Source: Thalia democratica (lineage: Eukaryota). From it: a stretch of 64,000 nt of DNA. The DNA lies in contig OZ241833.1 in NCBI GenBank assembly GCA_965202585.1, positions 56,420,001 to 56,484,000 of the forward strand, read 5' to 3'. The notes beneath the pieces were generated by a model, which saw only the letters and a program-made list of their open reading frames with translations, was not told the DNA's origin and did not search any database. Shown here piece after piece: positions 27,001 to 47,700 of the stretch. Both the position numbers and the translations under genes were made by a program. The stretch's first letter is position 1. Each line of letters opens with the position of its first letter.

Positions 27001-30000
27001 AAACTGTTGCATAAAATTACATGAAAAGGCTTTTATGTTAGCTAATTAAAATAAGTTTTTGTCAATTTACATATTAACTTATTAAGTTAAGAACTTAAAG
27101 CTCATTATAAGGGTTATGTGTTTTACAGACAACGAATTGAATAGTACAGAAGAACAAAATGTTGAATTTGTAATGCCACACTATGAAAAACAAAGTAACC
27201 AACCTCAAGCAAAGTCTACAAAACAGTCACATCTAAAAGATTCAAAGGAAAAAAAAGTAATTTCAGCATCTGATTATAAATTGATAACATCCGATATGGA
27301 AGCTGCGAAACTTGCTAGACATTCACATAACGATGTTTTCAACAATCAACCAGAGTTAAACTTCGATCAAGTTGATAATGAAAACTCACCTTCAGGTGCG
27401 AGTGTTGAAATGGAGTTGAGAACTATTCATACCGCCAAAACATACAAGGACGTTTCTAAACACAATCTCGCCCAATCTATGCACAAAGTTAGCCTAGCAG
27501 GGCTGCTTCCAAACGACCAGAATTTAAACTCTAAAAACTCAGTACTAGATGACACTTCGCAAGCAAGTATGAACGTAAACAACCCGGATACAGTTCATTC
27601 TTTGGATCAAACTTTGTCACAAGAATCTAATGCAGGGTCGGAAGCAGCTTTATCTTTAACTGATGATCTTATGGATGCTGAGGTCACGTTTGAGGTAGCT
27701 GAAAAAGTCAGAAAGTACTCAATAAGACCATATTCGTTGACAAAACCGCAAGAAGGTTTAAATGAAGAAGAATGTAAAAGAAGTAACGATAAAATTTCAA
27801 CAAACTTACCTAATGCTCATGTTGAAAATGATGTAAATACTTTAAAACAGTACGGGCCAGCTGGATCAGAAAGCTACGACCCAAATTATAGTAATTTAGA
27901 AGATCAAAGTAATTATCATGATAGTAGAAAACAGTTGCATTTAAAAAACGACTTAAATATATTAAACTCGAATACACTTGTTACAGGGATACATTCTAAA
28001 AAGCCTATAACAGCTAATAAAAATAGATCAAGTGTAGAAAAGTCAAATGTAATTGTTACAAAAGTAAAATCAGAATCACCACCCAAAGAATATAAAAGAA
28101 CGTCACAAACACTCAACTCAAACGTCCTTGTAAAAGGAGTTAAATCTGAGACGCCAATAACAGCTAATAAAAATCGATCAGGTATGGTAAACTCTAACAC
28201 GCTTGTTACAGGAGTTAATTCTGAGACACCAACAACTTCTAATAAAAATCAATCAGGTATAATAAACTCTAATACACTTGTTACTGGAGTTAAATCTGAG
28301 ATACCAACAAAAGCTAATAAAAATCAATCAGGTATAATAAACTCTAACACACTTGTTACTGGAGTTAAATCTGAGACACCAACAAAAGCTAATAAAAATC
28401 AATCAGGTATAATAAGTTCTAATACACTTGTTACAGGAGTTAAATCTGAGATACCAACAAAAGCTAATAAAAATCAATCAGGTATAATAAGTTCTAATAC
28501 ACTTGTTACAGGAGTTAAATCTGAGATACCAACAAAAGCTAATAAAAATCAATCAGGTATAATAAGTTCTAATACGCTTGTTACTGGAGTTACGTCTGAG
28601 ACACCTACAAAAGCTAATAAAAATCAATCAGGTATGATAAACTCTAATATACTTGTTACAGGAGTTAAATCTGAGATACCAACAAAAACTGATAAAAATC
28701 AATCAGGTATAAAAAACTCTAATATGCTTGTTACTGAAATTCAATCTGAGACACCAAAAACAGCTAATAAAGATCAATCAGGTATGATAAACTCTAATAC
28801 ACTTGTTACTAGAGTTAATTCTGAGACACCAACAACAGCTAATAAAGATCAATCAGGTATGATAAACTCTAATACGCTTGTTACTGGAGTTACGTCTGAG
28901 ACACCTACAAAAGCTAATAAAAATCAATCAGGTATGATAAACTCTAATATACTTGTTACAGGAGTTAAATCTGAGACACCAACAAAAGCTGATAAAAATC
29001 AATCAGGTATAATAAATTCTAATACATTTGTTACTGGAATTCAATCTGAGACACCAAAAACAGCTAATAAAGAAAATTCAGGTATGATAAACTCTAATAC
29101 GCTTGTTACTGGAGTTAAATCTGAGATACCAACAACAGCTAATAAAAATCAATCAGGTATGATAAACTCTAATATACTTGTTACTGGAGTTAAATCTGAG
29201 ATACCAACAAAAGCTAATAAAAATCAATCAGGTATAATAAACTCTAATATGCTTGTTACTAGAGTTAAATCTGAAACACCAACAACAGCTGATAAAAATC
29301 AATCAAGTATGATAAGCTCTAATATACTTGTTACAGGAGTTAAGTCTGAAACACCAACAACAGCTAATATAAATAAATCAGGTATGATAAACTCTAATAC
29401 ACTTGTTACAGGAGTTAAATCTGAGATACCAACAAAAGCTGATAAAAATCAATCAGGTATGATAAACTCTAATACACTTGTTACAGGAGTTAAATCTGAG
29501 ATACCAACAAAAGCTGATAAAAATCAATCAGGTATGATAAACTCTAATACACTTGTTACTGGAGTTAAATCTGAGATACCAACAAAAGCTGATAAAAATC
29601 AATCAGGTATAATAAGTTCTAATATACTTGTTACTGGAGTTACGTCTGAGACACCAACAAAAGCTAATAAAAATCAATCAGGTATGATAAACTCTAATAC
29701 ACTTGTTACAGGAGTTAAATCTGAAACACCAACAAAAGCTGATAAAAATCAATCAGGTATAATAAGTTCTAATACACTTGTTACTGGAGTTAAATCTGAG
29801 ATACCAACAAAAGCTGATAAAAATCAATCAGGTATGATAAACTCTAATACACTTGTTACTGGAGTTAAATCTGAGATACCAACAAAAGCTGATAAAAATC
29901 AATCAGGTATAATAAGTTCTAATATACTTGTTACTGGAGTTACGTCTGAGACACCAACAAAAGCTAATAAAAATCAATCAGGTATGATAAACTCTAATAC

Positions 30001-33000
30001 ACTTGTTACAGGAGTTAAATCTGAAACACCAACAACAGCTAATAAAAATCAATCAGGTATAATAAGTTCTAATACACTTGTTACTGGAGTTAAATCTGAG
30101 ATACCAACAAAAGCTGATAAAAATCAATCAGGTATAATAAGTTCTAATACTCTTGTTACAGGAGTTAAATCTGAGACACCAAAAACAGCTAATAAAGATC
30201 AATCAGGTATGATAAACTCTAATACACTTGTTACAGGAGTTAAGTCTGAGATACCAACAACAGCTGATAAAAATCAATCAGGTATGATAAACTCTAATAT
30301 ACTTGTTACAGAAGTTAAATCTGAGATACCAACAAAAGCTGATAAAAATCAATCAGGTATAATAAGTTCTAATACACTTGTTACAGGAGTTAAGTCTGAG
30401 ATACCAACAAAAGCTGATAAAAATCAATCAGGTAAAAAAAACTCTAATATACTTGTTACTGAAATTCAATCTGAGACACCAAAAACAGCTAATAAAGATC
30501 AATCAGGTATGATAAACTCTAATACACTTGTTACAGGAGTTAAGTCTGAGATACCAACAAAAGCTGATAAAAATCAATCAGGTATAATAAGCTCTAATAT
30601 ACTTGTTACTGGAATTCAATCTGAGACACCAAAAACAGCTAATAAAGATAAATCAGGTATGATAAGCTCTAATACACTTGTTACTGGAGTTAAATCTGAG
30701 ATACCAACAACAGCTAATAAAAATCAATCAGGTATGATAAACTCTAATATACTTGTTACAGGAGTTAAATCTGAAACACCAACAACAGCTGATAAAAATC
30801 AATCAGGTATAATAAACTCTTACACTTTTGTTACTGGAGTTAAGTCTGAAAAGCCCATTGTAGCGAATAACAGAAATTCAAATAAACTTAACTCAAATAT
30901 ACTACTTAATGGGATAAATTCTGAAAGTAACAATAGTGTAGCCCAAAAATCAAGTAATAAAATGGAGAAAAGGAAGTCTACGAACCTGAGTAAAAATCCA
31001 TCTAATATATCAAATATTAATCATAATAAATCACAAGAAAAAACAGTTTTAAATATTATTTCTACCCAACAATCAGCAGCTCAAAGTTCTATTCATTCAA
31101 AGCCTGAAATATTTTCAGTAAATGTAACTTCTTTCCAAGACAATTTAGACCACTTGAAAGGTGTTTCCGAGTTTCAATTACCTCAAGATTCGTCACAAGC
31201 AAACTTTACTAAAAATTTTTTAGGTGGTCAAGTGTTTGAAATAGATTCAGCCAAACCTATTTCAGCTGCTACGTCAATAGCTAGTGTGGCAAGCAAGCAG
31301 TTTGACCCCCGCTTATCGACTGAAAATCATGGCAGTAATATTCGCAAGTCTAGTTCAAGAAAAAGTTTTTTGTCCAAAAATGCAGTAGAAAAACTTACAG
31401 CTGACAATAAATTTCAAAAAATCGACAGTAAAGACTTCAATGTTCAAATGTCAGAAGTAAGCTATTATAGTAGCAATAACGACTATGGAAATAAACTAGA
31501 AAAACCTACTTCGATGGCCACTTCTTTTGCTAGTGGTAGTACTGAAATAAAAAATTTACAACCACCTTATGTTACAAGCCATGTTTCGTCTTTGAATTTG
31601 CTGGAGGATAAGCCTCAAAACGTTACTTCACAAAGGAGTTCAAATGCCCTAGGTCCAAACATGCTCGGTTCAAATGTACATATGGGAGTAAAGTCTGACA
31701 AACTAATTAGTGTACATAAATCTAGAGAAAATATAAGATTAAATGATTTATCTTCATCGAGCTCTGAAAGTAGCGAATCAGCAAACGAAACTTTAGCTAA
31801 AAATGGTAGCTTTGGTTGCTTTTTTGAAACACCATCAAGCACTGTAGCCAGCGACCACTTACCTAAAGGACAAGCAAGCATTATTTCAGTAAAAATTTCA
31901 GCAGACAACTCATTAGAACCGACAGAAAATGAAACTAACTCTGATCAAAAACCCTCTATCAAAAATTCCAGAACTAGTCTACTCGAGGTAGATTCAAAGA
32001 AAAGTGCTAGTGTAGTTTCTGTGAATTCTTACAAATCTGAGAGAAGATTATCTGTAAACCTACCTTTGGTCCAACCAAAAGTATCTCAACAAAGTTTAAG
32101 TTCTATAAGAAGTTTGTCAGCTACAAGCAGACCAAAAAGTCCATCTCAAAGTCAAGTTTATATTTTCGAACCTGATCAACATGCCAAAATTGTATCTTCA
32201 AAATCTAACATTCGTTTAAATGAATTTGATTCTACTTCAGAAACAACTAATGACATTAGTGATAAGCATAGTGATTCTCATGTTTCTCAAAACTTCTCTG
32301 ATCAAAAAAGTGTCATTAAAATAAACTCTCAGAATCCCAATTTAAGCCCAAATGAAATTAATTTTGTAAACCCATCACCATCATTAATCAAAAATCAAAG
32401 TAAGGTTGAGAACAACTTCAAGGTAAATCCAGTTTTAAGAAATGTATCTCAATTATCTGAAAAACCTTTAAAAGCTCCACAATTGATAGTTTCTAAAGAT
32501 AAACTGTCTCAAAACGTTAGCTGGAAACATTTTGATCAGCAGATTTCAGCTTCTAGTTCTAAATTTGATTATTTTGATGAACCAAGTCTTCATTCTGAAC
32601 GTTTAGAACCTAACAAGTCAGCAAGTAAACATCATAAAAGCAAAAAGTACAAAGGTACTTCTCGACAGTCCGGAATTAATGAGATTTTAAACAGTTCTGC
32701 TTCAAAAAATGATAACACTTTAGCAGAGCATTCGATGCTTCCAGAGCAATCATTGTCTGTAAATTACACAGAAGGTAAACTACCACACAATATTTCAAGG
32801 ATTAGTTCTAAAGAGTCAGAATTATCAAAACATGAAAAAGCATCAAAAAAAGAATATGACGTTTCCTCAGAATACTCAGAAGCAGCTCCGTCTATAAAGA
32901 AAACATCATCACTATCTTTGTCATTAGACTTGTCTCAAATTTCACAAGCAGTTGTGAATGAAAAAATAATGGAATCTCCAAAACCGATATCCGAATTTAC

Positions 33001-36000
33001 TTCAGTTGGCAGTATACCAATCAACAGGTTTGACTCTTTACCAAATGCACAGAAAATGAACACACTTACAGTTCAACAAAAAGAGTTAAACCCTGTTAAA
33101 TCTACGGATGAACATGCAATTTTAAGAAATTTAGAGCAGCGTACAGATAAGGTTACAAAAGACAAAACCAAACATCACCCTTCTGTCATTTCTGAAAACC
33201 TAAGCTCAATGAAATCTGAATCATCTGTTCTTTCTAATCAAATTAAACAAACTAAGTCTGGAAGTCTTAATCCTGATTATATTAATTTTAAGGTATCATC
33301 TGAACACTTTGAAGTAAATAAATCAAAAGCCACTACTAAAAATCCAAGTACGATAAAAACTGAGTCTTCCTATCTTTCTAATCAAGTTGGAGAAACTAAT
33401 TCAGAAATTATCAATCCTAATTATAGTAGTTTTAAAGTAGCATCTGAACACTTTGAACCAAACAAATCAAAAACCATTGCTAAAAATCCAAGTACGATAA
33501 AAACTGAGTCTTCTGTTCTATCTAATCAAATTAAACAAACTAGTTCTGTGAGTCTTAATCCTGATTATAGTAATTTTAAAGTAGCATCTGAAAACTATAA
33601 AGGAAATAAATCGAAAACGATTGCTAAAAATCCAAGCCAGATAAAAACTGAGTCTTCTGATCTTTCTAATCAAAATGAACAAACTAGTTCTGTGAGTCTC
33701 AATCCTGATTATAGTAAATTTAAAGTAGCATCTGAACACTTTGAACCAAATAAATCAAAAACCATTGCTAAAAATCCAAGCCAGATAAAAACTGAGTCTT
33801 CTGTTCTTTCTAATCAAACTGAACAAACTAGTTCTGTGAGTCTCAATCCTGACTATAGTAATTTTAAAGTAGCATCTGAACACTTTGAACCAAATAAATC
33901 AAAAACCATTGCTAAAAATCCAAGCAAGATAAAAACTGAGTCTTCTGTTCTTTCTAATCAAATTGAACAATCTAGTTCTGTGAGTCTCAATCCTGATTAT
34001 AGTAATTTTAAAGTATCATCTAAACACTTTGAACCAAATAAATCAAAAACAGTTGCTAAAAACCTAAGCAAGATAAAAACTGAGTCTTCTGTTCTTTCTA
34101 ATCAAATTGAACAATCTAGTTCTGTGAGTCTCAATCCTGATTATAGTAATTTTAAAGTAGCATCTGAAAACTATAAAGGAAATAAATCGAAAACAATTGC
34201 TAAAAATCCAAGCCAGATAAAAACTGAGTCTTCTGTTCTTTCTAATCAAAATGAACAAAATTATTCTGTGAGTCTCAATCCTGATTATAGTAATTTTAAA
34301 GTAGCATCTGAACATTTTGAACCAAATAAATCAAAAACAGTTGCTAAAAACCTAAGCACAATAAAAACTGAGTCTTCTGTTCTTTCTAATCAAATTGAAC
34401 AAACTAGTTCTGTGAGTCTCAATCCTGACTATAGTAATTTTAAAGTAGCATCTGAACACTTTGAACCAAATAAATCAAAAACAATAGCTAAAAATCCAAG
34501 CAAGATAAAAACTGAGTCTTCTGTTCTTTCTAATCAAATTGAACAAACTAGTTCTGTGAGTCTCAATCCTGATTATAGTAATTTTAAAGTATCATCTGAA
34601 CACTTTGAACCAAATAAATCAAAAACAGTTGCTAAAAACCTAAGCAAGATAAAAACTGAGTCTTCTGTTCTTTCTAATCAAATTGAACAATCTAGTTCTG
34701 TGAGTCTCAAACCTGATCACAGTAATTTCAAGGTAGGATCTGAACACTATAAACCAAATAAATCGAAAACAATTGCTGAAAACCTAACAACAATAAAAAC
34801 TAAGTCTTCTGTTTCTTCTAATCAAAATAAACAAAATAATTCTGGAAGTCTCAATTCTGATTATAGTAATTATAAAGCAGAATCTGAACACTATAAATCA
34901 AATAAATCAAAAACAATTGCTAAAAGTCCGAGCAAGATAAAAAAAGAGTCTTCTGATCTTTCTAATCAAATTGGAGAAACTTATTCTGGAGTTCTCAATC
35001 CTGATTATAGTAAATTTAAAGTAGCATCTGAACACTATAAAGAAAATAAATCGAAAACAATTGCTAAAAATCCAAGCCAGATAAAAACTGAGTCTTCTGT
35101 TTTTTATAATCAAATTGAACAAAAATATTCTGTAAGTGTTAATCCTGATTATAGTAATTTTAAAGTAGCATCTGAAAACTATAAAGGAAATAAATCGAAA
35201 ACAGTTGCTAAAAATCCAAGCAAGATAAAAACTGAGTCTTCTGTTCTTTCTAATCAAATTGAACAATCTAGTTCTGTGAGTCTCAATCCTGATTATAGTA
35301 AATTTAAAGTAGCATCTGAAAACTATAAAGGAAATAAATCGAAAACAATTGCTAAAAATCCAAGCACAATAAAAACTGAGTCTTCTGTTCTTTCTAATCA
35401 AATTGAACAAACTAGATCTGTGAGTCTCAATCCTGATTATAGTAAATTTAAAGTAGCATCTGAAAACTATAAAGTAAATAAATCAAAAACCATTGCGAAA
35501 AATCCAAGCCAGATAAAAACTGAGTCTTCTGTTCTTTCTAATCAAACTGAACAAACTAGTTCTGTGAGTCTCAATCCTGACTATAGTAATTTTAAAGTAT
35601 CTTCTGAACACTTTGAACCAAATAAATCAAAAACAATTACTAAAAATCCAAGCCAGATAAAAACTGAGTCTTCTGTTCTTTCTAATCAAATTGAACAAAC
35701 TAGATCTGTGAGTCTCAATCCTGATTATAGTAAATTTAAAGTAGCATCTGAAAACTATAAAGGAAATAAATCGAAAACAGTTGCTAAAAATCCAAGCCAG
35801 ATAAAAACTGAGTCTTCTGTTCTTTCTAATCAAATTGAACAAACTAGTTCTGTGAGTCTCAATCCTGAATATAGTAATTTTAAAGTATCATCTGAACATT
35901 TTGAACCAAATAAATCAAAAACAGTTGCTAAAAACCTAAGCACAATAAAAACTGAGTCTTCTGTTCTTTCTAATCAAATTGAACAAACTAGTTCTGTGAG

Positions 36001-36439
36001 TCTCAATCCTGACTACAGTAATTTTAAAGTAGCATCTGAACACTTTGAACCAAATAAATCAAAAACAGTTGCTGAAAATCCAAGCCAGATAAAAACTGAG
36101 TCTTCTATTCCTTCTAACCAAAGCACAATAAAAACGGAGTCTTCTGATCCTTCTAATCGAATTGAACCAAGTAAGTCGGAAAGCCTTGCTCCTGATTATA
36201 GTAAATTTGGAATGACCTCAAAACAGGCTCAAATTACGAAATCTAAACAAGAAAAAGAATCTCTTTCAAGCTCTTCTACTGAGTCTACTACTTTTATCAA
36301 GTTAACAGGAGAATTAGCAAACAAGGTTATGTCTGATTATAGTACCGTGGAATTCAACTGCATAAAAAGTGTCATATCTAGCAGAGATACTTCTGAGTCA
36401 GATACCACTGTCATTGGAGACGATTTTGAAAAATCATAA
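9036..36439 (+). CDS. Giant uncharacterised protein (gene A, about 4,320-4,360 aa): unrecognised N-terminal domain, tandem-exon repeat region and S/K/N/T-rich repeat tail
   Basis: Exons: 9036-9109, 9381-9472, 10552-10628, 10908-11010, 11578-11644, 11796-11959, 12190-12248, 12823-12910, 13230-13250, 13675-13911, 15780-15992, 16745-16840, 17088-17207, 17493-17615, 17855-17962, 18025-18141, 18199-18321, (18381-18487, 107 nt, frame-breaking), 18542-18664, 18729-18845, 18904-19026, 19086-19193, 20386-20508, 20573-20680, 20735-20857, 20922-21029, 21084-21206, 21271-21378, 21433-21555, 21620-21727, 21782-21904, 26080-26187, 26244-26387, 27129-36439. All are GT-AG and phase-consistent except the flagged one. 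The protein starts MSRIVRPVLPETYSDFRLIPHGNINLKFVEAV, and its N-terminal exons are corroborated by the paralog on the - strand. Confidence 0.82.
9540..9948. mobile_element. MITE with CA(G/T)GGTTGCCAC-type termini and internal ctcagggaa repeats
   Basis: Starts catggttgccac and ends gtggtaaccctt, with many ctcagggaa motifs inside. Lies in intron 2 of gene A. Confidence 0.6.
14830..15480 (+). mobile_element. 5'-truncated Penelope-like retroelement (GIY-YIG endonuclease remnant plus 3' end)
   Basis: Reads VVYQFS..C../YIGLTTRHIRKRIKEHVPKS (one frameshift), then ORF 14921-15199 SSIAEHLVNNSTCANSYNINRF...KPVLSKRKDFDYTVSLFS, which resembles the GIY-YIG ORF at 63635-63976. A downstream motif CTGATGA GAATTGCTC GAAA lies at 15391-15410. 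Confidence 0.8.
18025..21904 (+). repeat. Tandem exon+intron duplication array inside gene A (about 705-bp and 349-bp periods)
   Basis: Exon starts 18025/18729, 18199/18904 and 18381/19086 are 704-705 bp apart. Exon starts 20386, 20735, 21084, 21433 and 21782 are exactly 349 bp apart, and the introns are duplicated along with the exons. Confidence 0.92.
19213..20322. mobile_element. Penelope-like 3'-end fold-back (inverted repeat, ~465-bp arms)
   Basis: 19213-19676 is the reverse complement of 19852-20322. The arms encode ..HLSVLESLFIKTFKPNLCKQQYVYNSNLYKLL*, matching the C-terminus of the GIY-YIG ORF at 63635 (HLSVLESLFIRTREPKICKQ..YNLKLYK). Confidence 0.85.
23873..24720. mobile_element. Penelope-like remnant bracketed by inverted pLTR-like ends carrying minimal hammerhead motifs
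   Basis: About 23873-24010 is the reverse complement of about 24580-24720. The - strand of 24230-24420 reads WKLKNNSICHELKWNIM...IC*TCNL...KKQELF, resembling PLE GIY-YIG C-termini. Confidence 0.65.
24730..25450 (-). mobile_element. Degenerate LINE (CR1/L2-like) reverse transcriptase fragment
   Basis: On the - strand: CVFLDLNKAFN (about 25145-25180; cf. VFLDLSKAFD) and MPKGLFFGVVLFLLHISDL...FANET...ELEIISDWLIVNRL (24779-24994; cf. PQGSILGPLLFLIYINDL...FADDT...WL..NRL). Confidence 0.75.
26583..26796. repeat. Palindromic MITE-like fold-back (~90-bp arms)
   Basis: cagaaaggctata...aagtgaaatttaaaccaaactatcttt...catcaatttattt pairs with aaataaattgatg...aaagatagtttggtttaaatttcactt...tatagcctctctg. 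Confidence 0.8.
27129..36439 (+). CDS. 9,311-nt terminal exon of gene A (low-complexity, two tandem repeat blocks)
   Basis: Uninterrupted 3,107-codon ORF in the ORF track. The acceptor ttttacag|ac is in phase 1, matching the upstream exons. Confidence 0.9.
28178..30877 (+). repeat. Coding minisatellite: 36 x 75 bp (25 aa, SGIINSNTLVTGVKSETPTKANKNQ)
   Basis: tcaggt(a/g) recurs from 28178 to 30803 (35 x 75 bp). Two or three degenerate units lie upstream from about 27960. Confidence 0.95.
33197..36200 (+). repeat. Coding minisatellite: about 20.5 x 144 bp (48 aa, NPSQIKTESSVLSNQIEQTSSVSLNPDYSNFKVASEHFEPNKSKTIAK)
   Basis: Unit starts at 33197, 33341 ... 36077 (20 x 144 bp), plus a partial final unit. 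Confidence 0.95.
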
Positions 36440-38380
36440 TATAGTGTTTTATAAAAACTAATGATATTTTTTATCGTTTTTTTTTATCGTTTTTCTATGC
36501 AATGCATGAAATCCTGCTCACTGTGCATCTTTTATAATTAAGCAAGGTACTTTTTTAAATATCAGTATATATATACAGATTAAATTATACCTTGTAATAA
36601 CTTTTACTCAAAAATAAACTTATTTATAGATATATTTTCTGTTTTTCTTACAATATATAACAGTTATGAATAGTTTATAGCTTTTTTTATAATTAAAAAA
36701 AACTTTCAAAGCACGTTTTAACTAAGTAGTTATACTATACATTTTCTTTATCACTAGCTTTTAATAGATTCAAGCCTTTTTAAATCATAAACAGAAAGCC
36801 AGTACAAAGAAAAACATTCTGTTTTAAAAATATTTTTCACTAAGAATTTCCAGCTAATTACTATAATACTAATTTCTTTTGATATCAATATTTTGATGTT
36901 TTTTTTAAATTAGTTAATCCTTTAAGAATATTTTACCAAAAAGCACTCACTGAATAAATCAATGAAAAAACAGATAGATTTTTTGGCATGTTTTTTAACA
37001 TTTAACAAAAATGTCTACAAGATTAGTTGCTTGAATTAATAACAACTGAAAGAATTTCACTTTTTTACATTATATCAAGTATAGTTGAAATGGTCGTGTT
37101 TAAATTTAAATATATTGTTTAAGTTTTAACATTTTAAGTAAAAGTTGTATTTATTTTATCTCACTTTACATTAATAAAAAAACAAATAGTTTATATTTTG
37201 TAAAGTTTTAGGATGCAGTATGATTTTCAATCTATTTAAAGAACGGAATACTCTTTAAAAAACTATTATGTAGATTAGTGGTGGGAAATTTTTAAGTGGG
37301 CGGTCCAAATTTACCAGAACTTGAAATTTTTGCAGCCCGGACTAATTTTAAACGTATTGTTGATAAATATATACTACAATAATAAATAAGTATTCTTTAA
37401 AACAAACTCCTATGAAAAAATAACTTAATAGGTACTATTGTATACTTAATAAGTTATCATTTTAAAGTATTTGCTACAAAAAGATCATTTTATTAATTGT
37501 GCACGAATTGTTTTTAAGCTAAAAGTTTATCGCGGGCCTGACGTTGCCTATCCTTATTGTAGATATATTAAACTTTTTCGGCAAATATATGTCAAAGAAT
37601 TTTTTGAAATAGTTGAATATTTTTTATTGTACTTATTCTGAAAGTTACTTTTTTTCTAACGAAAACTTTCCAAAAAAACATTTATTTTCTATGTTTCTAA
37701 AAACTGTTATAAAAGTTTTGTTGACTTAAGGCCTCAGTAGTCTTGTTGTTTATAGAACGACAAAAGAAGTGCTCAAAATATTTGGTCCAATAACCTTGTT
37801 TACAAAGAAATCTTTCGGTTATCGAGTTGTATACCACTTGGGTACAGCTTGGATCAGTGGTAATAAGTTTTTAGTGAAAAACTAAGTATTTATGTTTGGG
37901 TATGTGTCAGACAAGCACAGCGTCACTTTAGCACAAGGTGACACTATAGCACGGCATCACTTTAGCACGGAGTGTCACTCTAGCACAGCGTCACTTTAGC
38001 ACGAGGTGATACTATAGCACGGCGTCACTTTAGCACGGAGTGACACTTTGGCACGGTGTCACTTTAGCACGGAGTGACATTTTTGCACATAATAATTTTA
38101 AATGTTTTAAAATGTTCATTTAAATAATGTTTAAATATCTAAAATAATTAACTTAACAAACAAATAATTGTGAAAACTAGTTCTAATACTTTTCAAAATA
38201 TCGGCTTAAAAAAATTATGAATAAAGTTTTCATTATGGGTTTAAAATGAAATAAGAAATTTTCTAATCTAATCTAGCCAATATTTATTTCGGCCATCATC
38301 AACAATGTTGAGATGTTTTATGCCATCGATAATAAACAATGAACTTTACCGCAAGATCAACAACAACAGCTTCCGAGACA

Positions 38381-38425
38381 ATCCTACGACCGGTTTCGTC
38401 CTTATTAGGACTCATCAGGCAGGAA
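38381..38425 (-). ncRNA. Type I hammerhead ribozyme (inverted copy)
   Basis: Reverse complement: TTCCTGC CTGATGA GTCC-TAATAA-GGAC GAAA CCGGT C GTAGGAT. Confidence 0.9.
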
Positions 38426-38643
38426 TAGTCGCGAGAAACCGCTATTGTGATCTTAAACAAGCGGGCTTAAGTACTAAGTACTGAAGCGACCGTTTGTGGG
38501 TAAAATTGAAAAAATGACACAGCTATATCATTCACAGCTCAACGTCTCAGACATTGTCAGCTTGTTGTGAGATTGTAGTCTGCTTAAGTACTTAGTACTT
38601 AAGCCCGCTTGTTTAAGATCACAATAGCGGTTTCTCGCGACTA

Positions 38644-38688
38644 TTCCTGCCTGATGAGTCCTAATAAGGACGAAACCGGTCGTAGGAT
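38644..38688 (+). ncRNA. Type I hammerhead ribozyme; predicted cleavage after C38681 (GUC)
   Basis: Intact core CUGAUGA/GAAA, 4-bp stem II GUCC/GGAC, palindromic stem III ACCGGU, GUC triplet and stem I UCCUGC/GUAGGA. Confidence 0.92.
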
Positions 38689-38970
38689 TGTCTCGGATGC
38701 TGTTGTTGTTGATCTTGCGGTAAAGTTCATTGTTTATTATCGATGGCATAAAACATCTCAACATTGTTGATGATGGCCGAAATAAATATTGGCTAAAACT
38801 GATCAAACGAGCGCAGACTACAATCTCACAACAAGCTGACAATGTCTGAGACGTTGAGCTGTGAATGATATAGCTGTGTCATTTTTTCAACTTTACCCAC
38901 AAACGGTCGCTTCAGTACTTAGTACTTAAGCCCGCTTGTTTAAGATCACAATAGCGGTTTCTCGCGACTA

Positions 38971-39015
38971 TTCCTGCCTGATGAGTCCTAATAAGGACGA
39001 AACCGGTCGTAGGAT
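38971..39015 (+). ncRNA. Type I hammerhead ribozyme; predicted cleavage after C39008
   Basis: Identical to the 38644 copy, 327 nt downstream. Confidence 0.92.
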
Positions 39016-40390
39016 TGTCTCGGATGCTGTTGTTGTTGATCTTGCGGTAAAGTTCTAATCTAATCTAGTTATGCTTCTATTTTTTTGTTTAAAAGCTTAA
39101 AGTTTAGCCTTATTAAAATTATTTAAAGCATTTAGAAAAAAGAATTAATAGTCCTAGAGCCTGTATTTATTGCTAGCTTTATTAAAATAGTTTCAATGCA
39201 AAAACTTTAAAGTATAAGTATCAAAACATTTTCATATAAAATTAAATAGTAAAACAAGTTAACAAAGTTTTTAAATTTACTTTAGTTTTAATTTTAAATA
39301 AAGCTTAAACTTGTAACTCATTTAAAGCTTGTTAACTTTTAGTTTACATGTTGCATAATTCGTTTTTAGATTTTTAAACAATACAGTACGTAACGTGATT
39401 TAGGCAAATAACAAAAAATGCAAATTAAATTCTGTGCTAAAATGTAACTCCGTGCTAAAGTGTCATTCTGTGCTAAAGTGTCACTCTGTGCTAAAGTGTC
39501 AAACGTGCTTTTTTGACCCGTTCCCTTATAATTTGTTGAAAATATTTTAGTATAATCATGAACAAGCAAATAGATAACAAGTTTTATACTTAAACTAATT
39601 TTACCAATACAATATTGGGATTACAAAGTACCTGAACTTACTCAGCTAGTAGCTAAAATCAGCTAACCATCATATGCCCACAAGATTTAAGATTAAAAAA
39701 TCATCGCAATTCCTTTGTCCTATTCTTCTCCTTCAATATCATAAATTTTTTTTTTTTTTATAATAACGGCATTGAAGCTTTGTATAGCGATTATCAAGAA
39801 GTTTTCCACATTTATCAATATTTAAGCTAATTAAGTCACGCTTGCAACTCACTTGTCTAGTAATTAGGTGATGTAACATATACGACCTAATCATTGTACA
39901 GCAGAAATTTTGGAAATCGCCACTTGTTTTTCTTCAAAACATTAGCAAGTCTGTGCTACCTTAGAATGGTGAACATGATATTGATGCTATTTCGTTCCAT
40001 AACTTTTGTTAATCCTAACTTAATTGTAAGGAAACAATAGAGGTATTGTTAGTTGAAGGTGTAATCTTTCTTCTTTTGCACCTTGATAGGATCTGTGTTT
40101 TGTTGTCATAAAACAGAGAAACATAGGAGAAAAAATAAACAATCTAATTTGCACAGATAGCACACATAGGTGGTCTAATGAAAGTTGGGAAAGTTTTTAC
40201 TTGCGCCACTTTGCTCTAGTGTCCATTGATACTGAAGTCCGCTGGCATTGGTACTCCAGTTTCTGCAAGACCGGTTAAGTCTGAATCTTTTAAATGAGGC
40301 TTATTTTTTAGTCTTAAACTCTTTTTGAAGATTTATTCATTTTACTTAATATATGATAATTGGATAACTTAAATAATTACAACTGATAAT

Positions 40391-40459
<69 letters not shown>
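40391..40459 (+). repeat. (ACA)23 microsatellite
   Basis: Perfect acaacaaca... run of 69 bp. Confidence 0.97.
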
Positions 40460-41721
40460 GTTTAATATAAAAAGTTCAATCAAAAGTTTGTTAGTAAAAT
40501 ATGTATAAAAATAAAAGTTCAAAATAAACTTAAAAAAACCATTACTTTTATTTTTAAAATATAAAGGAAAATAATATAACTAATAAAATCAACTGCTTAT
40601 CTGATGATAAGCTGGTGTATACAATAAGATACAATGCATTAGACTGAGTAAGGAAGTTTAAAGTGTCTTCAATTCGTAACTAAGCGTAACTACGTACGCG
40701 ACATGCTTTTTATACCAAATCTGGATAGCAACTGAAATGTTGTAAATGAAACTTGATGTTGAACTGATTAGACTGAGTAATACGGAAACTTTAGTTTAAA
40801 TAATGTGTAAATATTGCATTTCAAACAAGGACGATTGTATACAATTTGCGATTGTCACTGCCATACGTTTAACATGGTGATTTTCGCAAATACTAAAAAG
40901 CTTTCCGAAGCGCTTGTCTTCGAGTTATATTGTTGGTGGGAAGTGTGCTTCTTAGATAAAGACTTTTTTTGAATCTAATGAAAAGTGATTCAAGAGTGTC
41001 TCTAGATCTTTAACCAAAGAATGCTATGCTAGAAGTACAGCTATATCAGTAGTTTATCTTAAACGTTAGAACATAACTATATGTAAACTTTTATTTAACA
41101 AAAGTGTTTTTAATTTACGTTTTTGTTACATAAGACTTTATTCTTGTAAATTTAGTTAGGTGACTAGTAAACCTTCCAATTTTTAATCTAGTTATAATTT
41201 CTGAACATTATAGAACTTTGTTTCATAAAACAGTTTTATTCAAATAAGTTTCTAAAATTAATTTTCTAGCTTGAAAATTAAACTTTGCTAAAACTATTTA
41301 TATAGATAACAATGTTTGGATTTTTTGGACAAATAGTGATACTTTAGAAAATAATAATTTAATAAAAGAAAATTAATAAACTATAGACTTATCTTTAAAA
41401 AAATTCAGTTTTATGTTTAATCAAATAAATATAAGCTTTACATAAACATTAGTTATGTCGAGATAGTTTAATAATCTATATACTTAAAGTTTAAACCAAC
41501 GCAACAAAATTGTTTTATAGTGTTTTTTATCTAAAACTTAAGTTTAAAAAAAACTTCTTATTAAACTCTATAATATAACTTTTAAATAATATTCAATGAG
41601 AAGTAACGTAAAAAAACTATTTAACATAACAAAAGCATTTTTCAGTTATAGCCTGCATTTATTATTTTAAACAATAAATTCATTTACACTTTTAAGTCAA
41701 TTAGCATTAGTGTGCTTCAGT

Positions 41722-44700
41722 TCAATAATCGTTTTCTCTAGATACTGTGCTCACTTTGCTGACACTTGGTTTGGGATGAGAGATACTCAACTTGCTTTCT
41801 AATCTTGCAATACTCAGCTTACCTCTATCTACTAAGCTCATTTTACTATCATTAACTTTTGAGGCTGAACGTTTTTCAACTGTAGATGGAGTCCTGCAAA
41901 TTTAATTTACAAAAATATATTCATTATGCGATGTTTAAGGTTTATTTGAAAAAGCGGTGATACTGTCTTAAACGAAATCATAGACTGAAATATTATTTAA
42001 ATAATAAAAAAAAAATCAAAATCAAATTTTAGTTTATAAAAAAGGTTTTACCTTTCCATGGAAGGCTGCTTATGAGAATGTTGTCTACCAATGTTTATCC
42101 TAGAAATCCTTTCTTTTATTCCCTGTATTGACATAAGACTTGATCTGGAAGTCAAAGATGTTTTAGACTCCTCCCTAGCACCAGTTGTAGATCGCGGTGG
42201 GCGTCTAGAAGTGGATCTTTGACGAGAAACATACTCGTTGCGGTTAGAAAGTCGCGGAGATCTAGCTTGATTGGAGAGGGATTGAAGAGCTATGGATTGA
42301 GATTGGAGGCTAGCACGAGATGTTGCATCTGATGGTGGACTGTCATCAACGCTCGTTACGTGTTGAAATTCATCTTCATTTTGGCCTTGAGGTTGAGTCA
42401 TGTGTATGGATAATGCAATTGACGATTTTATTAACTCTACCGCGTCTTCAAACTGTTTATCAGAGAGATAGACTTCTTTACCGCCATCATTTGTGGGTAT
42501 TGTAAAATTTCTAATTGAATCCTCATGAATAAAAGAAGGTTGCCGTTCGTCAATTTCATTTATGTGGAGACCACTAGTTTCTAACTTAATTGGCATGTTA
42601 GATGCTATTGAAGGGCTTCTTTCGTCAATTTCGTTAATATGAAGACCATCGTTTTCAACTTTTGTAGGTCTGTAAGACACAACAGATGGTTGCCGTTCGT
42701 CAATTTCATTTATGTGGAGGCCACTATTCTCCAACTTAGTTGTTATGTTAGATGCTATTGAAGGGCTTGTTTCGTCTATTTCGATAATATGACTAGCGTC
42801 ATTTTCGTAGTTTTTACGTGCTAATGATATAAGAGAAGGTTGCCGTTCATCAATTTCGTTTATATGGGCACCAACATTATCTTCTTTATGTGGCATATAA
42901 GATGCTACTGAAGGGCTTCTTTCGTCTATTTCGTTAACATGAAGACCATCGTTTTCAATTTCTGAAGGTTTGTGAGATACAAAAGAAGGTTTCCTATCGT
43001 CTATCGCGTTTACATGAAGTCCCTTTTCTTCAATAAAGCTACGCCGTCTGTCTGCTAGGATTATATGGGATTCTTGAGCCATACTTTTTGCAGCTGAAGA
43101 AATTCTTACAATAGATTCTTTGTCTATAGATTTGTGAGAAGATCTATCATCTGTTACGTGGCTTGCTTCATCTTCTTTTTCATCAATAACGTTTTTGTTG
43201 ACTTTTCTACTCATGATAGAAGTAATTGATTCTTTTACTTTGCTAACTTTCGATGGCATTGAAGCGATGGAGTCGGGTTTATCATCGAGTTCGTGGATAT
43301 GGTCATCATCTTCGACTTCGATTAAGTCTTCGTCGTCAATCAAATTACTCCTAGACTCTCTGACGCTCTTTCTCTTTTTGGTCAATGTGATTCTCTTCAT
43401 CAATGAACCCACTGAAGAAGTTGTGTCTCCCGGAAGAGTGACACTGTCCTCATCTTGTGCTACTTTGTAACCTGACGTCAGATCAGCTATTTCACCTTCT
43501 GACTCTCTGGCGGTTGACAATCTCGACTCCAAGACAGAGTTTGCCATAGCTTTTGACATTTGTGATATGATAGATGGACTTTTGGCATCGATTTCAGTGA
43601 CGTGATCGCTTTCTTGGTCATTTTGTTTCTTTTGTTTGTATGCTTGGTTTGTAACTGCTGATTTTATTAACTGAGCTGCATCGTCATATCCTCCTATATA
43701 ATAAATTGAGTTTTAAAACTTAACTGTTCAAAATATAGATTTAATTGTTTGCTAACAAAATATCCTAGTGAAACAAGTTCACTGGAACATAAATTAAAAA
43801 AAACAAATTATACAGTAATCTTCCTTTGTTGTACCAACATATGTTTCTGTGTGTTAACTAATCAACACACTTCAACTGGGTTTCTTAAATTCTTTTCATT
43901 AAAAACCCAGTTTTGAAACTTTTACATTTGTTTATCAGCAGTTACATTAAAATTTTGGCTCATTCCAAATACAATACTTGCCAATAGTTACCTTATTGAA
44001 GCCTATTGAAATTTAAAATTAATTAAGTGTATTTAAAAGAACTTACCTTGAGATATTTTGCTTTCTTTTTGACCCGCTTGAGGCGAATCTTCTTCCACGT
44101 CATCGGAGATCCTAGAAGTTTTCATTTTGATCATGTTGTTTTCCGTGTCCTCTTGATCTTTATCGTCGATTGCGACTCCCATCATAGTTGCAGACATGGC
44201 GGCTTCCAACAATGTGGCCGACATTGCAGCTTCAACCAGCTTTGCAGTGACGTTTTCATCAATGTTTTTATTGATGGCAGCTTTAATAAGGGCTGAGGAC
44301 AATTTAGATGCTGATTCCATTGTAGAACGAGCAACCTCTGCGTATAAAAATATAACATTTAAACATTTTCTACAATAACCTCTTTAATATGGTCTTTACA
44401 ATAACCTCTTTTTGTCTGCTCAAAAATTTCTTTGAAAACATATTTAGCTAGAACTTTAACAAACTACTTGAGCTCTAATATTAAGTGTGTGTAAAACTAA
44501 ATTCAATTTTAAATATAATTAAATTATAGATTTGTTTGTCCTATTGACGAAGCAGTATTAAGTAACTATTCCAGTTTATCTACTTTATTTTGTCATTAGC
44601 AGCTTCGAAATTCGAATTAAAAAAGTTTTGTTCAAAATAATCAATCAACACCTTCCAAAACTTTTATGAATAGAACTCAATCAGCAAATGACAACATTTA

Positions 44701-47700
44701 AAACGGTAATCTGGATTAGAAACTTAATAGTATTCCGTCGACAGGGCACCACTTAAGTAAAACCCCAATAGTTCAAAACATAAATATAACAAGTTGTGTC
44801 AAAAATTTACTTCAATTAAATATAAAAATTATGCAAACATTAGAAGTTATTCAAGTTTTTTTTAGCGTTTAAAATTAAAAAAATACTTTGTTTATACAAA
44901 CACTATATTTTTAAATATCAAAGAAACAAATTTTATTTTATTTTTAGTAGCTGGAAATTCAATACTATGAAGTATTAAGACAACAACTAATTGACTACAA
45001 ATGAATAAAAAATTATTTGTTCTTAAATGCTTACTTAAAATAAGGTATTTATTGTTTTTACCTGAAATTTTCTCCTGTTTCGACTGGTGGCTTCGAACGC
45101 TGCTTTCACTTCCCAATCTTCCAGTTGTTTCTCCCTCCTTGGAGACTGCATCTCCGTATTTCATTGAAGTTGTGTGAGCTTCAAAGTTTTCGTCAGAGAT
45201 ACTTTCTTGTTGGTTCAGTTCTTGGAAACTTGGCTGAGCTCCAAAGCTCTTTTGTTCTTGTAATTCACTCTGACAGGCGAAACTCTTTTGTTCATGCATT
45301 ACGCTCTGACAGGCAAAACTAACCCGACCAACTTCACTTTTCCTCCCCTCTGCACCATTTTCTATGCTCATTTGATTACCAAAGCTTTTTTGTTCGGTTA
45401 GATTTATCGGTACTTCATTATTTTCTTGTATTTCCACACTTGTTTGCATGTGCATACTTTTTTGCATTCGAACACTTTTCCTGGCTTCAACACTCTCTTG
45501 TGCTTCCAGTTTGTTTTCCGGTAAACTTTCTTGTTCAGGTGCTTCCAATTTATTTTCCGAAAAACTTTCTTGTTCAGGTGCTTCCAATTTGTTTTCCGGT
45601 AAACTTTCTTGTTCAGGTGCTTCCAATTTATTTTCCGAAAAACTTTCTTGTTCAGGTGCTTCCAATTTGTTTTCCGGTAAACTTTCTTGTTCAGGTGCTT
45701 CCAATTTGTTTTCCGGTAAACTTTCTTGTTCAGGTGCTTCCAATTTATTTTCCGATAAACTTTCTTGTTCAGGTGCTTCCAATTTATTTTCCGAAAAACT
45801 TTCTTGTTCAGGTGCTTTCAATTTGTTTTCCGGTAAACTTTCTTGTTCAGGTGCTTTTTCTTCGGTCGTATAACCATCATTAGTGTCAAGCACCTGAGAT
45901 CTGGCCTCCTTGAATATTGACTGATATATGTTGTCAAGTTCGTCATTGTTGCCTTCATTATCAATGCTTTCTTTCTTGCTAACCTGCTGGTTAAGTTTCT
46001 GTTTGAAATCGTCTTCAAATGACTTCCCGCCTTGCTGTATTGTGCTATCTGAAAATAAAAAAAGGAATTTTATTTCAACTTATACGCATTCAGACTAATA
46101 AGTTCAATACAATCTTAAACTAACATTTTTTTGAAGTTCATTTTATTTAAAATTCAACAAAGTCAAGTTTTTTAACAAAACTAGCTTATGTATCCATTTT
46201 TAAATTACTATTTTAGTTAATAAGAGCTTTAGGCTGATTTTTTTTATTTATTTACTTTTGTTTTACCCTCAAACATTAAAGTTAAAATTAATAGAAAACG
46301 GATTAATTAAATTCCGAAAACTTCATATAATTTTTTGACAAAAACTTTGTATGCATTGAAAAATGTTAGCAACCTTTTGGTTAAATATAAAAACTTACAT
46401 TTATGAAGAGATAATAAAAAGATCAAAGCTAAGTTTTAATATACCAGTTAGCTAGAATAAACAAACTATTTATTTTTACCTTGTTGTTGAAATTTGTGAC
46501 TGGAGTGTTGTGTTAGAGGAGCTGCTTTTGATTCGTAATGTTTTGGATTTATACTGCTGTTGCTATCTGATTCATGTGGTTTACTTTCTGTACATATTAC
46601 TTACGTTTTATAAAGGCTATTATCTACAAAGAAGTAAATATTTATAATGTTTATGTTCATTCAGCAAAAAATATAAAATTTCCGACAAAGTGACATTATT
46701 AAATCTAAGATTCAGATTATAGTTATTTTATTATTGATATCTTACAGTGCTCCATTAATTATTCTAAAAAAATAAAATATTTAAAAAATATTTTGATAAA
46801 TATTTTATCAAAAATATCTTTAAATATGGTTGATAAACTTTACATAAATAATTTAAAAAAGCTTTTACTTTTGAGCTATATTTACATTCAGCTATTATAT
46901 ATTGCAAAATAAAGTTTGTTCGTTACGAATGTAAACGTTGATTTTTTGTGTGTAAACTTTATTATTTCACAAATTATTTTCTACCAAGTTTAAGTTTTAA
47001 CAACTTATAAAATAAAACATGATTACTTTTAAAATATTATGTGTTTTGAATTTTAGAAAACAAAATTACTTTAAAAATTCAACCTTTAGAAAAGTTTTTG
47101 CTTATCAAAAAATAAAAGGCACGCTCAAAAATTTGTTTTACCAGAATTTAAAACTTAAAATAATTTTACAAACAACATTTTCTAATTAAAAAACTTATTG
47201 CATAAAACAAAAAAAGGCACTTTTGACGCAAGAAGCTATCAAACAGAATTTGTAAGTACATAATTGTTTTTGTTCAATGTTATGAATGGTCTTTTTAGTT
47301 TAATTGTATGACAAATATTTTGGTCGTAATTTTGTAAAAGAGACTTATATTATTTATATAAAACTTATTTTCAAAGTAATTATTAGAATTAAGGTTTAAG
47401 TCTTGAAAGAGCTTTAAGCTAAACTATGAAAAACGCTTGACACTCTAAAAACATAGCATTGAGCAAAAGTTATAATATAACCTATTTACATTTAAACAAC
47501 TATTTTAATCTGGCTCTGTTTGATTTTATACTTAACTTAAATCAAGTCTTTTTTAATGATGTCTTAATTCAATTCAAATTTAGACTAACAACTAGCTGCT
47601 TTAAAAGGATAGTTTTTTTTTTTAATCTGAGAAAAACTTAAGCTTTATCTTAAACTTGGTATGAGAAGACAGAAAGCTAATCTTAACACTGTCCTAGTTT

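What the first reader, a model, noticed from the sequence alone, without database searches (positions are those of the whole stretch)
38277..39052. Retrozyme-like element: 327-nt structured RNA unit with a canonical hammerhead ribozyme
Three near-identical textbook type I hammerheads (CUGAUGA-GUCC/GGAC-GAAA-CCGGU-C). Stem III is a palindrome (ACCGGU), the design known to favour dimeric cleavage in tandem copies. Two forward ribozymes 327 nt apart would excise a unit-length RNA (38682-39008) able to circularise. The monomer has long-range complementarity (aagatca/tgatctt, caatagc/gctgttg, ggtaaagtt/aactttacc) and no ORF. This matches the known class of non-autonomous retrozymes (tandem hammerhead repeats producing circRNAs). 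Whether this particular family is described I cannot tell. The copies differ at only about two positions in the parts I compared, which suggests recent activity.
Basis: partly seen in the sequence, partly recalled or inferred. Interest (0 to 1): 0.88.

Follow-up and report, generated by a model that had tools for sequence, protein, structure and literature searches.

The report
Young hammerhead retrozyme insertion, foldback form
This is one recent, probably inert copy of a very abundant small non-coding mobile element that carries a self-cleaving hammerhead ribozyme, a kind of element described in animals in 2020, so it is a real but ordinary find.

Summary
Three identical hammerhead cores lie at 38393-38418 (-), 38651-38676 (+) and 38978-39003 (+): 3 matches against 0.01 expected by chance. 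Rfam model HH9 matches each at E 4e-8 to 7e-8, below its gathering score only because loop III is absent. The two forward ribozymes are 327 nt apart.

The whole feature is a single 777-nt insertion. It has an inverted 310-nt arm followed by 1.45 forward units, and a 16-nt target duplication (TTCTAATCTAATCTAG) flanks it. The unit has no ORF. As a circle it folds far better than shuffled sequence (z -6.5). Its ACCGGU helix III pairs between two ribozymes.

Two genomic runs each hold more than 10,000 contigs that match the stretch. Two marine RNA libraries hold the unit but not the equally repetitive flanks.

This fits the animal non-LTR retrozymes, and the insertion scars match those of Penelope-like elements.

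Three things remain unshown: a circular RNA, transcription of this particular copy, and the identity of the mobiliser. A transcript of the whole insert would fold into a hairpin of about 240 bp that buries one cleavage site, so this copy is probably inert.

This scan has already found the same family several times on other pieces of this genome. Verdict: new member of a known kind, modest interest.

The parts
38261..38276 (.). Left copy of the 16-nt target-site duplication TTCTAATCTAATCTAG. Its last 3 nt (TAG) could equally belong to the element (microhomology).
38277..38583 (-). Inverted arm. On the minus strand it reads unit positions 132-327 and then 1-114 (310 nt counting the 3 shared nt), so it crosses the ribozyme cleavage junction once. 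It differs from the forward unit at 2 positions.
38365..38436 (-). Hammerhead ribozyme motif of the inverted arm. Predicted cleavage on the minus strand lies between 38388 and 38387.
38582..38604 (.). Inner junction of the two arms, with 2 nt of overlap, lying in the unit's own 23-nt palindrome. One base (38586, A instead of C) makes the palindrome perfect here.
38584..39055 (+). Forward arm of 1.45 units: unit positions 228-327, 1-327 and 1-47. It crosses the cleavage junction twice.
38633..38704 (+). Forward hammerhead 1. Helix I 5' strand 38639-38650; CUGAUGA 38651-38657; helix II and loop 38658-38671; GAAA 38672-38675; palindrome ACCGGU 38675-38680; C17 at 38681, with cleavage after it; helix I 3' strand 38682-38692.
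38682..39008 (+). 327-nt unit between the two cleavage sites. It is non-coding, 41% GC, with a predicted circular fold of -102.1 kcal/mol (z -6.5).
38960..39031 (+). Forward hammerhead 2, with cleavage after C39008.
39053..39068 (.). Right copy of the 16-nt target-site duplication. Its first 3 nt (TTC) could equally be unit positions 45-47 (microhomology).
37914..38098 (.). Left array of 16-18-nt subrepeats (AGCACGGNGTCACTTT) belonging to the older high-copy repeat that received the insertion. The inverted partner array lies at 39422-39501.

Best explanation
The feature is a single, young retro-insertion of a 327-nt non-coding hammerhead retrozyme (an animal-type, non-LTR retrozyme). The life cycle of the family is inferred from the published class. 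Tandem copies are transcribed. Two adjacent ribozymes pair through their ACCGGU segments to form a double hammerhead, and each cuts after GUC. [quoted passage not shown] A reverse transcriptase supplied in trans, most likely from a Penelope-like element, copies it into a staggered chromosomal break.

The history of this locus can be read from the sequence. Both 3' ends of a break staggered by about 10-16 bp annealed to the plus-strand RNA through 3 nt of microhomology, at unit positions 45-47 and 112-114. One cDNA ran 474 nt (1.45 turns) and the other 310 nt. They were joined through 2 nt of overlap inside the unit's palindrome. The result is an inverted arm followed by a partial tandem, between target duplications. 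Both arms read straight through the ribozyme cleavage site, so the template was uncut or religated, meaning either a multimer or a circle.

This copy is probably inert. A transcript of the whole insert would fold into a hairpin of about 240 bp that hides one of the two cleavage sites.

The confidence of 0.85 is for the retrozyme retro-insertion reading. That the mobiliser is a Penelope-like element I put at about 0.65.
For: Ribozyme: 3 motif matches against 0.01 expected, full-length HH9 matches at E about 5e-8, and all core residues present. The homodimer fold forms the 6-bp ACCGGU/ACCGGU helix III, at -46.5 against 2 x -21.2 kcal/mol.

Anatomy: inverted repeats of 243 and 214 nt at 99%, a direct repeat with 327-nt spacing, and a flanking direct repeat. 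The inverted and forward arms share the same departures from the family majority at mirrored positions, for example 38306/38763, 38526/38870, 38539/38857 and 38475/38921. This points to one template and one event. There are only 3 differences in 457 nt and the duplication is perfect, so the insertion is young.

Family: runs X1 and X4 each lay more than 10,000 contigs on the stretch.

RNA: metatranscriptome X13 has a 356-nt contig covering 38652-39007 with 2 differences, at depth 43. The oligo-dT run X16 also holds the unit. Both have zero depth on the flanking repeats, which are as abundant in DNA as the unit itself. This argues against DNA carry-over.

Structure: circular plus strand z -6.5; no ORF; no tRNA-Met primer-binding site.

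Published definitions that match: PMC7229834 (class, 170-400 nt units, larger target duplications, low GC, self-paired circles); PMC4209133 (6-bp helix I, 4-bp helix II, short palindromic helix III acting as a dimer); PMC8557442 (Penelope-like insertions are partial tandems with an adjacent inverted 5'-truncated copy, a target duplication of variable length and a bias towards microsatellites); preprint 10.64898/2026.07.22.740005 (animal retrozymes as non-autonomous derivatives of Penelope-like elements).
Against: No self-cleavage assay exists and no circular junction was shown. Logan contigs cannot tell a circle from a tandem transcript. The 356-nt RNA contig carries two minority variants (38821, 38906), so it comes from another family member, not from this locus. 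No Penelope-like reverse transcriptase or GIY-YIG gene lies in this window, and I could not compare the unit with any autonomous element. A 5' inversion by twin priming is also known for LINE-1, so the scars alone do not identify the enzyme. There is no 30-40-bp 'tail' of the kind often seen at Penelope-like insertions. I could not obtain an empty-site allele: the syntenic metagenome contig L003 stops at about 39380.
Confidence: 0.85

Rival explanations
1. It is the same retrozyme, but a LINE-type (non-Penelope) reverse transcriptase mobilised it by classical twin priming.
For: The geometry is the twin-priming geometry established for LINE-1 (established knowledge, Ostertag and Kazazian 2001): an inverted 5' arm next to a direct arm, microhomology at both outer ends and at the inner junction, and a 10-16-bp duplication. 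PMC7229834 leaves both LINEs and Penelope-like elements open as mobilisers.
Against: There is no poly(A) or simple-repeat 3' tail at the right end. Insertion as more than one unit in tandem, together with hammerheads, is typical of Penelope-like elements (PMC8557442, PMC4209133). The 2026 preprint links retrozymes to the pLTRs of Penelope-like elements.
Confidence: 0.15
2. It is a piece of hammerhead satellite DNA that was moved or rearranged at the DNA level (fold-back repair, segmental duplication), with no RNA intermediate.
For: Hammerhead repeats were first known as satellites in newts and schistosomes (PMC7229834). Palindromic junctions can arise by fold-back repair, and the inner junction does lie in a palindrome.
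Against: The block is short (2.4 units), bounded by a perfect 16-nt duplication of the target with microhomology at both ends. It sits inside an unrelated repeat and there is no other copy within 64 kb. Thousands of contigs carry heterogeneous flanks (loose ends with low agreement).
Confidence: 0.05
3. It is an endogenised cDNA of an autonomously replicating viroid-like or satellite circular RNA, rather than a genomic retroelement.
For: The RNA would be small, highly structured, non-coding and hammerhead-bearing, and the unit is present in marine RNA libraries.
Against: The ribozyme is in one polarity only. The minus strand has no ribozyme match and folds weakly (z -2.7). The sequence is very abundant in genomic DNA runs of several labelled organisms. 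IMG/VR holds no match to the core.
Confidence: 0.03
4. This reading does not exclude the main one. Because of its foldback shape, this locus acts as a source of long double-stranded RNA and small RNAs that silence the family.
For: The whole-insert RNA folds into a nearly perfect hairpin of about 240 bp, at -552.5 kcal/mol, z -45.
Against: Transcription of this locus is not shown. The RNA contigs that match carry variants of other copies. No small-RNA data were examined.
Confidence: 0.15

Closest known systems
Metazoan non-LTR retrozymes (Cervera and de la Pena 2020, PMC7229834), e.g. those of Acropora, Mytilus and axolotl
   Same: A type I hammerhead in every unit of a short head-to-tail repeat (170-400 nt in the paper, 327 nt here). 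The unit is non-coding, has low GC, lacks LTR, PBS and PPT, has a target duplication longer than 4 bp, folds into a strongly self-paired unit, has high copy number and is present in RNA libraries.
   Different: The unit has no detectable similarity to anything I could search, and the exact ribozyme sequence was not found in the paper library. Circular RNA is not demonstrated here. This copy carries an inverted arm, a feature the 2020 paper does not emphasise.
Penelope-like elements and their pLTR hammerheads (PMC4209133, PMC8557442; preprint 10.64898/2026.07.22.740005)
   Same: The insertion anatomy matches: a partial tandem with an adjacent inverted 5'-truncated copy, a target duplication of variable length, and a target that looks like a short microsatellite (TCTAA repeated about three times). 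The hammerhead has a palindromic helix III meant to act as a dimer.
   Different: There is no reverse transcriptase or GIY-YIG ORF, the unit is only 327 nt, and there is no 30-40-bp tail. The ribozyme is the 'canonical' metazoan form (6-bp helix I, 4-bp helix II), not the 'minimal' Penelope form with a long helix II.
Rfam Hammerhead_HH9 (RF02275) and the dimer-dependent hammerheads of newt satellite 2 and avocado sunblotch viroid (Forster et al. 1988, cited in PMC4209133)
   Same: The core and helices I and II align over the whole HH9 model. Helix III is too short to form within one molecule and is palindromic, the design for a double hammerhead.
   Different: The 5-nt loop III of the HH9 consensus is entirely absent, so the score (38-39 bits) falls below the family's gathering score (52).
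LINE-1 twin-priming inversions
   Same: Two cDNAs are primed from the two 3' ends of a staggered break, with microhomology at the priming sites and at the inner junction.
   Different: There is no poly(A), the template is longer than one unit (tandem or circular), and the element is non-autonomous and carries a ribozyme.

Membership tests
Hammerhead ribozyme, type I | Conserved core (C3 U4 G5 A6 N7 G8 A9, G12 A13 A14, A15.1-U16.1, H17) with three helices, helix I being the open one | tested here: met
   Sequence read; full-length HH9 alignment; motif count 3 against 0.01 expected.
Hammerhead ribozyme, type I | Reaches Rfam's curated gathering score | tested here: not met
   38.4-39.3 bits against 52. 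The shortfall comes from the missing loop III, a known trait of metazoan dimeric hammerheads (PMC4209133).
Hammerhead ribozyme, type I | Self-cleavage at the predicted site | not testable with these tools
   This needs in vitro transcription. The contig data cannot show RNA ends.
Dimer-dependent (double) hammerhead | A palindromic helix III too short to form within one molecule, pairing between two copies | tested here: met
   A homodimer cofold gives a 6-bp ACCGGU/ACCGGU helix, at -46.5 against -42.4 kcal/mol for two monomers. This is a prediction only.
Metazoan non-LTR retrozyme | Head-to-tail repeats of about 150-450 bp, each with a type I hammerhead | tested here: met
   327-nt spacing, 1.45 forward units with 2 ribozymes.
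Metazoan non-LTR retrozyme | Non-coding; no LTR, PBS or PPT; GC below 50%; target duplication longer than 4 bp | tested here: met
   No ORF; no tRNA-Met PBS match; GC 41%; 16-nt duplication.
Metazoan non-LTR retrozyme | Dispersed multicopy family | tested here: met
   More than 10,000 contigs in each of two genomic runs, with heterogeneous flanks. Earlier scan notes put the count at 2,000-3,500 copies; I did not check that figure.
Metazoan non-LTR retrozyme | Expressed as monomeric linear and circular RNA | tested here: inconclusive
   The unit is present in RNA libraries X13 and X16 while the equally repetitive flanks are absent. Monomer size, RNA ends and circularity cannot be seen in contigs.
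Metazoan non-LTR retrozyme | Stable, highly self-paired predicted fold of the circle | tested here: met
   -102.1 kcal/mol against -71.5 +/- 4.7 for shuffles, z -6.5.
Non-autonomous derivative of a Penelope-like element | Insertion as a partial tandem with an adjacent inverted 5'-truncated copy and a target duplication of variable length | tested here: met
   compared with the description in PMC8557442.
Non-autonomous derivative of a Penelope-like element | Sequence similarity to the pLTR or 3' end of an autonomous Penelope-like element in the same genome | not testable with these tools
   I had no access to the rest of the genome. There is no RT or GIY-YIG ORF in the window.
Plant LTR retrozyme | Type III hammerheads in about 350-bp LTRs, tRNA-Met PBS, PPT, 4-bp target duplication | tested here: not met
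   The hammerhead is type I, there are no LTRs, there is no PBS, and the duplication is 16 nt.

The most novel reading that the evidence does not exclude
Both arms run through the ribozyme cleavage site. Both outer ends lie at internal unit positions, each defined only by 3 nt of microhomology with the target. Insertions of this family could therefore be the genomic record of rolling-circle, target-primed reverse transcription on the circular RNA itself. That step has been proposed for animal retrozymes but never demonstrated. With thousands of young copies, the distribution of end points around the unit would make it directly testable.
Probability: 0.3. Interest if true: 0.6.

Novelty: new member of a known kind. 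Interest (0 to 1): 0.3.

Why it matters
It adds a very young, very abundant retrozyme family in an AT-rich marine eukaryote to a class whose means of mobilisation is still inferred rather than shown. The locus is a clean textbook example of the insertion scar: an inverted arm and a partial tandem between target duplications, with microhomology at all three joints. It suggests a concrete census test of whether the template is a circle or a multimer, and whether the enzyme is Penelope-like or a LINE. By itself it does not change what is known.

Tried and rejected
Rfam at gathering threshold over the whole window found nothing. The ribozymes appear only with the E-value threshold.

Scanning JGI metagenome contigs for the 31-nt core gave one unrelated AT-rich contig (L001). 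Its helix I does not pair, and a transposase-like ORF lies next to it. IMG/VR gave nothing.

Searching the paper library for the exact ribozyme sequence gave nothing.

I tried to find an empty-site allele through neighbouring genes. The two large ORFs are not on record. Homologues of the 503-aa ORF led to two marine metagenome contigs, one of them (L002) from a PRJEB4352 sample. They are syntenic at 82% and 93-94%, but they end at window positions 40195 and about 39380, short of the insertion.

I tried to place the organism with Pfam and the protein atlas on neighbouring ORFs. This gave only an EF-hand hit and low-complexity look-alikes, so the taxon remains 'marine eukaryote, probably a planktonic animal', which is inference.

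I considered and rejected reading the loose ends at 38651 and 38681 in RNA contigs as cleavage ends. They are the borders of the 31-nt core shared with other hammerhead families, which is where the 31-mer-based contigs branch (my inference from the contig borders).

I considered the 104-codon ORF at 38528-38842(-). It starts with TTG and spans the inner junction, so it is mechanical.
Full report
WHAT IS THERE

The pattern CTGATGA-N(8-30)-CGAAAC occurs three times in the 64-kb window, all inside the finding: 38393-38418 on the minus strand, and 38651-38676 and 38978-39003 on the plus strand. Dinucleotide-preserving shuffles give 0.01 expected matches, and none of 100 shuffles reached three.

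Rfam finds nothing at gathering threshold. With the E-value threshold, Hammerhead_HH9 matches all three sites over its whole length, at 38.4-39.3 bits and E 3.8e-8 to 7e-8. The alignment explains the shortfall against the gathering score of 52: the consensus GAAACC-uauuA-GGUC is here GAAACC-GGUC, so loop III is absent.

All conserved core residues are present. Helix II is 4 bp, closed by the usual G10.1-C11.1 pair, with a UAAUAA loop. Helix I is 6 bp, followed by a small internal loop and 3 further pairs. The cleavage triplet is GUC. The ribozyme's own 5' and 3' ends lie in helix I, so the motif is type I. Predicted cleavage falls after C38681 and C39008, and on the minus strand between 38388 and 38387.

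ANATOMY OF THE LOCUS

The three ribozymes are not three independent copies. Repeat finding and a BLAST of the unit against the window show three things:
- a forward arm at 38582-39055 that reads unit positions 228-327, 1-327 and 1-47 (1.45 units);
- an inverted arm at 38274-38583 that on the minus strand reads unit positions 132-327 and then 1-114 (310 nt);
- no other copy anywhere in the window.

The block is flanked by a perfect 16-nt direct repeat, TTCTAATCTAATCTAG, at 38261-38276 and 39053-39068. At each outer end, 3 nt of this repeat could equally belong to the element: TAG on the left is the complement of unit 112-114, and TTC on the right matches unit 45-47. The two arms overlap by 2 nt at the inner junction, which lies in the unit's own 23-nt palindrome.

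The arms differ at 3 of 457 aligned positions: 38371, 38505 and 38586.

In the genomic runs, the two arms share the same departures from the family majority at mirrored positions: 38306/38763, 38526/38870, 38539/38857 and 38475/38921. This means both arms were copied from one template in one event.

READING OF THE EVENT (INFERENCE)

A chromosomal break staggered by 10-16 bp exposed two 3' ends. Each end annealed to the plus-strand RNA by 3 nt and primed reverse transcription. One cDNA ran 474 nt and the other 310 nt. They were joined by 2 nt of microhomology. This is the twin-priming geometry known from LINE-1 (established knowledge). [quoted passage not shown] The target here is about three units of TCTAA.

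The forward arm crosses the ribozyme cleavage junction twice and the inverted arm crosses it once. The template was therefore continuous across the cleavage site. It was either an uncleaved multimer of at least about 2.7 units or a religated circle copied for more than one turn. The sequence cannot tell these two apart.

THE UNIT

The 327-nt unit has 41% GC in a 27% GC window. It has no meaningful ORF in a tandem trimer on either strand; the longest ATG-started frame is 59 codons. It has no tRNA-Met primer-binding site.

Folded as a circle, the plus strand reaches -102.1 kcal/mol against -71.5 +/- 4.7 for shuffles (z -6.5). The minus strand is much weaker (z -2.7) and has no ribozyme match.

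A cofold of two ribozyme segments forms the intermolecular 6-bp ACCGGU/ACCGGU helix III, at -46.5 against 2 x -21.2 kcal/mol. This is the double-hammerhead design. PMC4209133 describes it as the norm for metazoan type I hammerheads: helix I 6 bp, helix II 4 bp, and helix III 1-2 bp capped by a small palindromic loop, active as a dimer in tandem repeats.

FAMILY SIZE AND RNA

Sequencing-run look-ups found the unit in runs labelled with four coded organisms and in many marine and seawater metagenomes and metatranscriptomes.

Laying four runs on 37850-39450 gave more than 10,000 contigs each for X1 and X4. About 13% were at 99% identity or more, 33% at 95-99% and 54% at 90-95%. The family is therefore large and of mixed age.

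The highest depths fall on the ribozyme bins. Many contigs diverge exactly at the borders of the 31-nt core (38651 and 38681). I read this as other hammerhead families sharing the same core, not as cleavage ends.

In the RNA runs, X13 (metatranscriptome) has a 356-nt contig covering 38652-39007 with two differences at depth 43. X16 (oligo-dT) has several contigs. Both have zero depth on the flanking repeats at 37904-38119 and 39146-39450, which in DNA runs are as deep as the unit itself. That internal control argues that the signal is RNA and not contaminating DNA.

The X13 contig carries two minority variants (38821 C>A, 38906 G>A). It therefore comes from another copy, and transcription of this locus is not shown. 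Contigs carry no strand and no ends, so neither polarity, nor monomer size, nor circularity is shown.

THIS COPY IN PARTICULAR

Folded as one RNA, the whole insert forms a nearly perfect hairpin of about 240 bp, at -552.5 kcal/mol and z -45. This hairpin pairs the inverted arm with the distal part of the forward arm and buries the second ribozyme and its cleavage site. Only a transcript starting inside the forward arm would present both ribozymes. Folded alone, 38584-39053 forms helices I and II of both ribozymes.

I therefore consider this copy a probable dead end, or at most a source of double-stranded RNA.

COMPARISON WITH WHAT IS KNOWN

The class was defined by Cervera and de la Pena (PMC7229834). 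It comprises short tandem repeats (about 170-400 nt) with type I hammerheads in animals. [quoted passage not shown] They are proposed to be mobilised by LINEs or, more likely, Penelope-like elements through reverse transcription of the circle into tandem cDNA.

A 2026 preprint (10.64898/2026.07.22.740005) reports that retrozymes and Penelope-like elements co-occur, and that in Xenopus retrozymes group with the pLTRs of Penelope-like elements.

Every sequence-level criterion I could test is met here. Three things were not testable: self-cleavage, circular RNA, and similarity to an autonomous element. The window has no reverse transcriptase or GIY-YIG ORF.

The exact ribozyme sequence is not in the paper library. 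The core is essentially absent from the JGI metagenome and IMG/VR collections. This particular family may therefore be undescribed, but that is an absence in limited collections.

EARLIER NOTES OF THIS SCAN

Other readers and follow-up agents have flagged the same family of about 326-334 nt on other pieces of this genome. They reached the same reading: a retrozyme inserted Penelope-style, with thousands of copies. I treated these as leads. The anatomy, the high copy number and the class assignment I verified independently here. Their copy-number figures, and their statement that Penelope-like elements live in this genome, I did not verify.

VERDICT

The feature is one young, twin-primed insertion of a high-copy hammerhead retrozyme nested in an older repeat. 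It is a new member of a known kind and of modest interest. Its main value is as a clean specimen for a genome-wide test of how such elements are copied.

Noticed in passing
window 37914-38098 and 39422-39501: Arrays of 16-18-nt subrepeats (AGCACGGNGTCACTTT) lie in inverted orientation about 1.3 kb apart and enclose the retrozyme insertion. They are themselves very high copy in the genomic runs (summed depth up to 4e5) but absent from the RNA runs. They look like the ends of a foldback- or MITE-like element that served as the target.
   Followed up: partly
window 27116-36439 (+): An uninterrupted 3107-codon ORF in a 27% GC genome. Its only Pfam hit is the EF-hand domain (E 7.6e-17). No gene with exactly this product is on record in the gene-position index.
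   Followed up: partly
window 39380-46982; loci L002 and L003: Two marine metagenome contigs (L002 from a PRJEB4352 sample; L003 from another ENA assembly) are syntenic with this part of the window at about 82% and 93-94% identity. Relatives of this organism are therefore present in open-ocean samples. Both contigs break off in repeats before reaching the insertion.
   Followed up: partly
window 38651-38681, with loose ends at 38422 and 38681: The 31-nt ribozyme core is shared with at least one other hammerhead family, which has a different helix I and continues TCAGTCTACCGAAA... after the cleavage site. That family is also present in the RNA runs X13 and X16.
   Followed up: no
window 38731-38740 (unit positions 50-59): Dozens of genomic contigs in X1 and X4 stop matching here and continue into heterogeneous AT-rich sequence. 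This suggests that many family copies end within about 12 nt of this copy's right end (unit position 47). The cause could be a preferred 3' end or favoured priming in the most AT-rich part of the unit.
   Followed up: no
locus L001 194-224: An identical 31-nt hammerhead core sits in an unrelated AT-rich metagenome contig next to a transposase-like ORF, but the flanks do not form helix I. It is probably a decayed or unrelated copy.
   Followed up: partly
window 40391-40459: A perfect (ACA)23 microsatellite.
   Followed up: no
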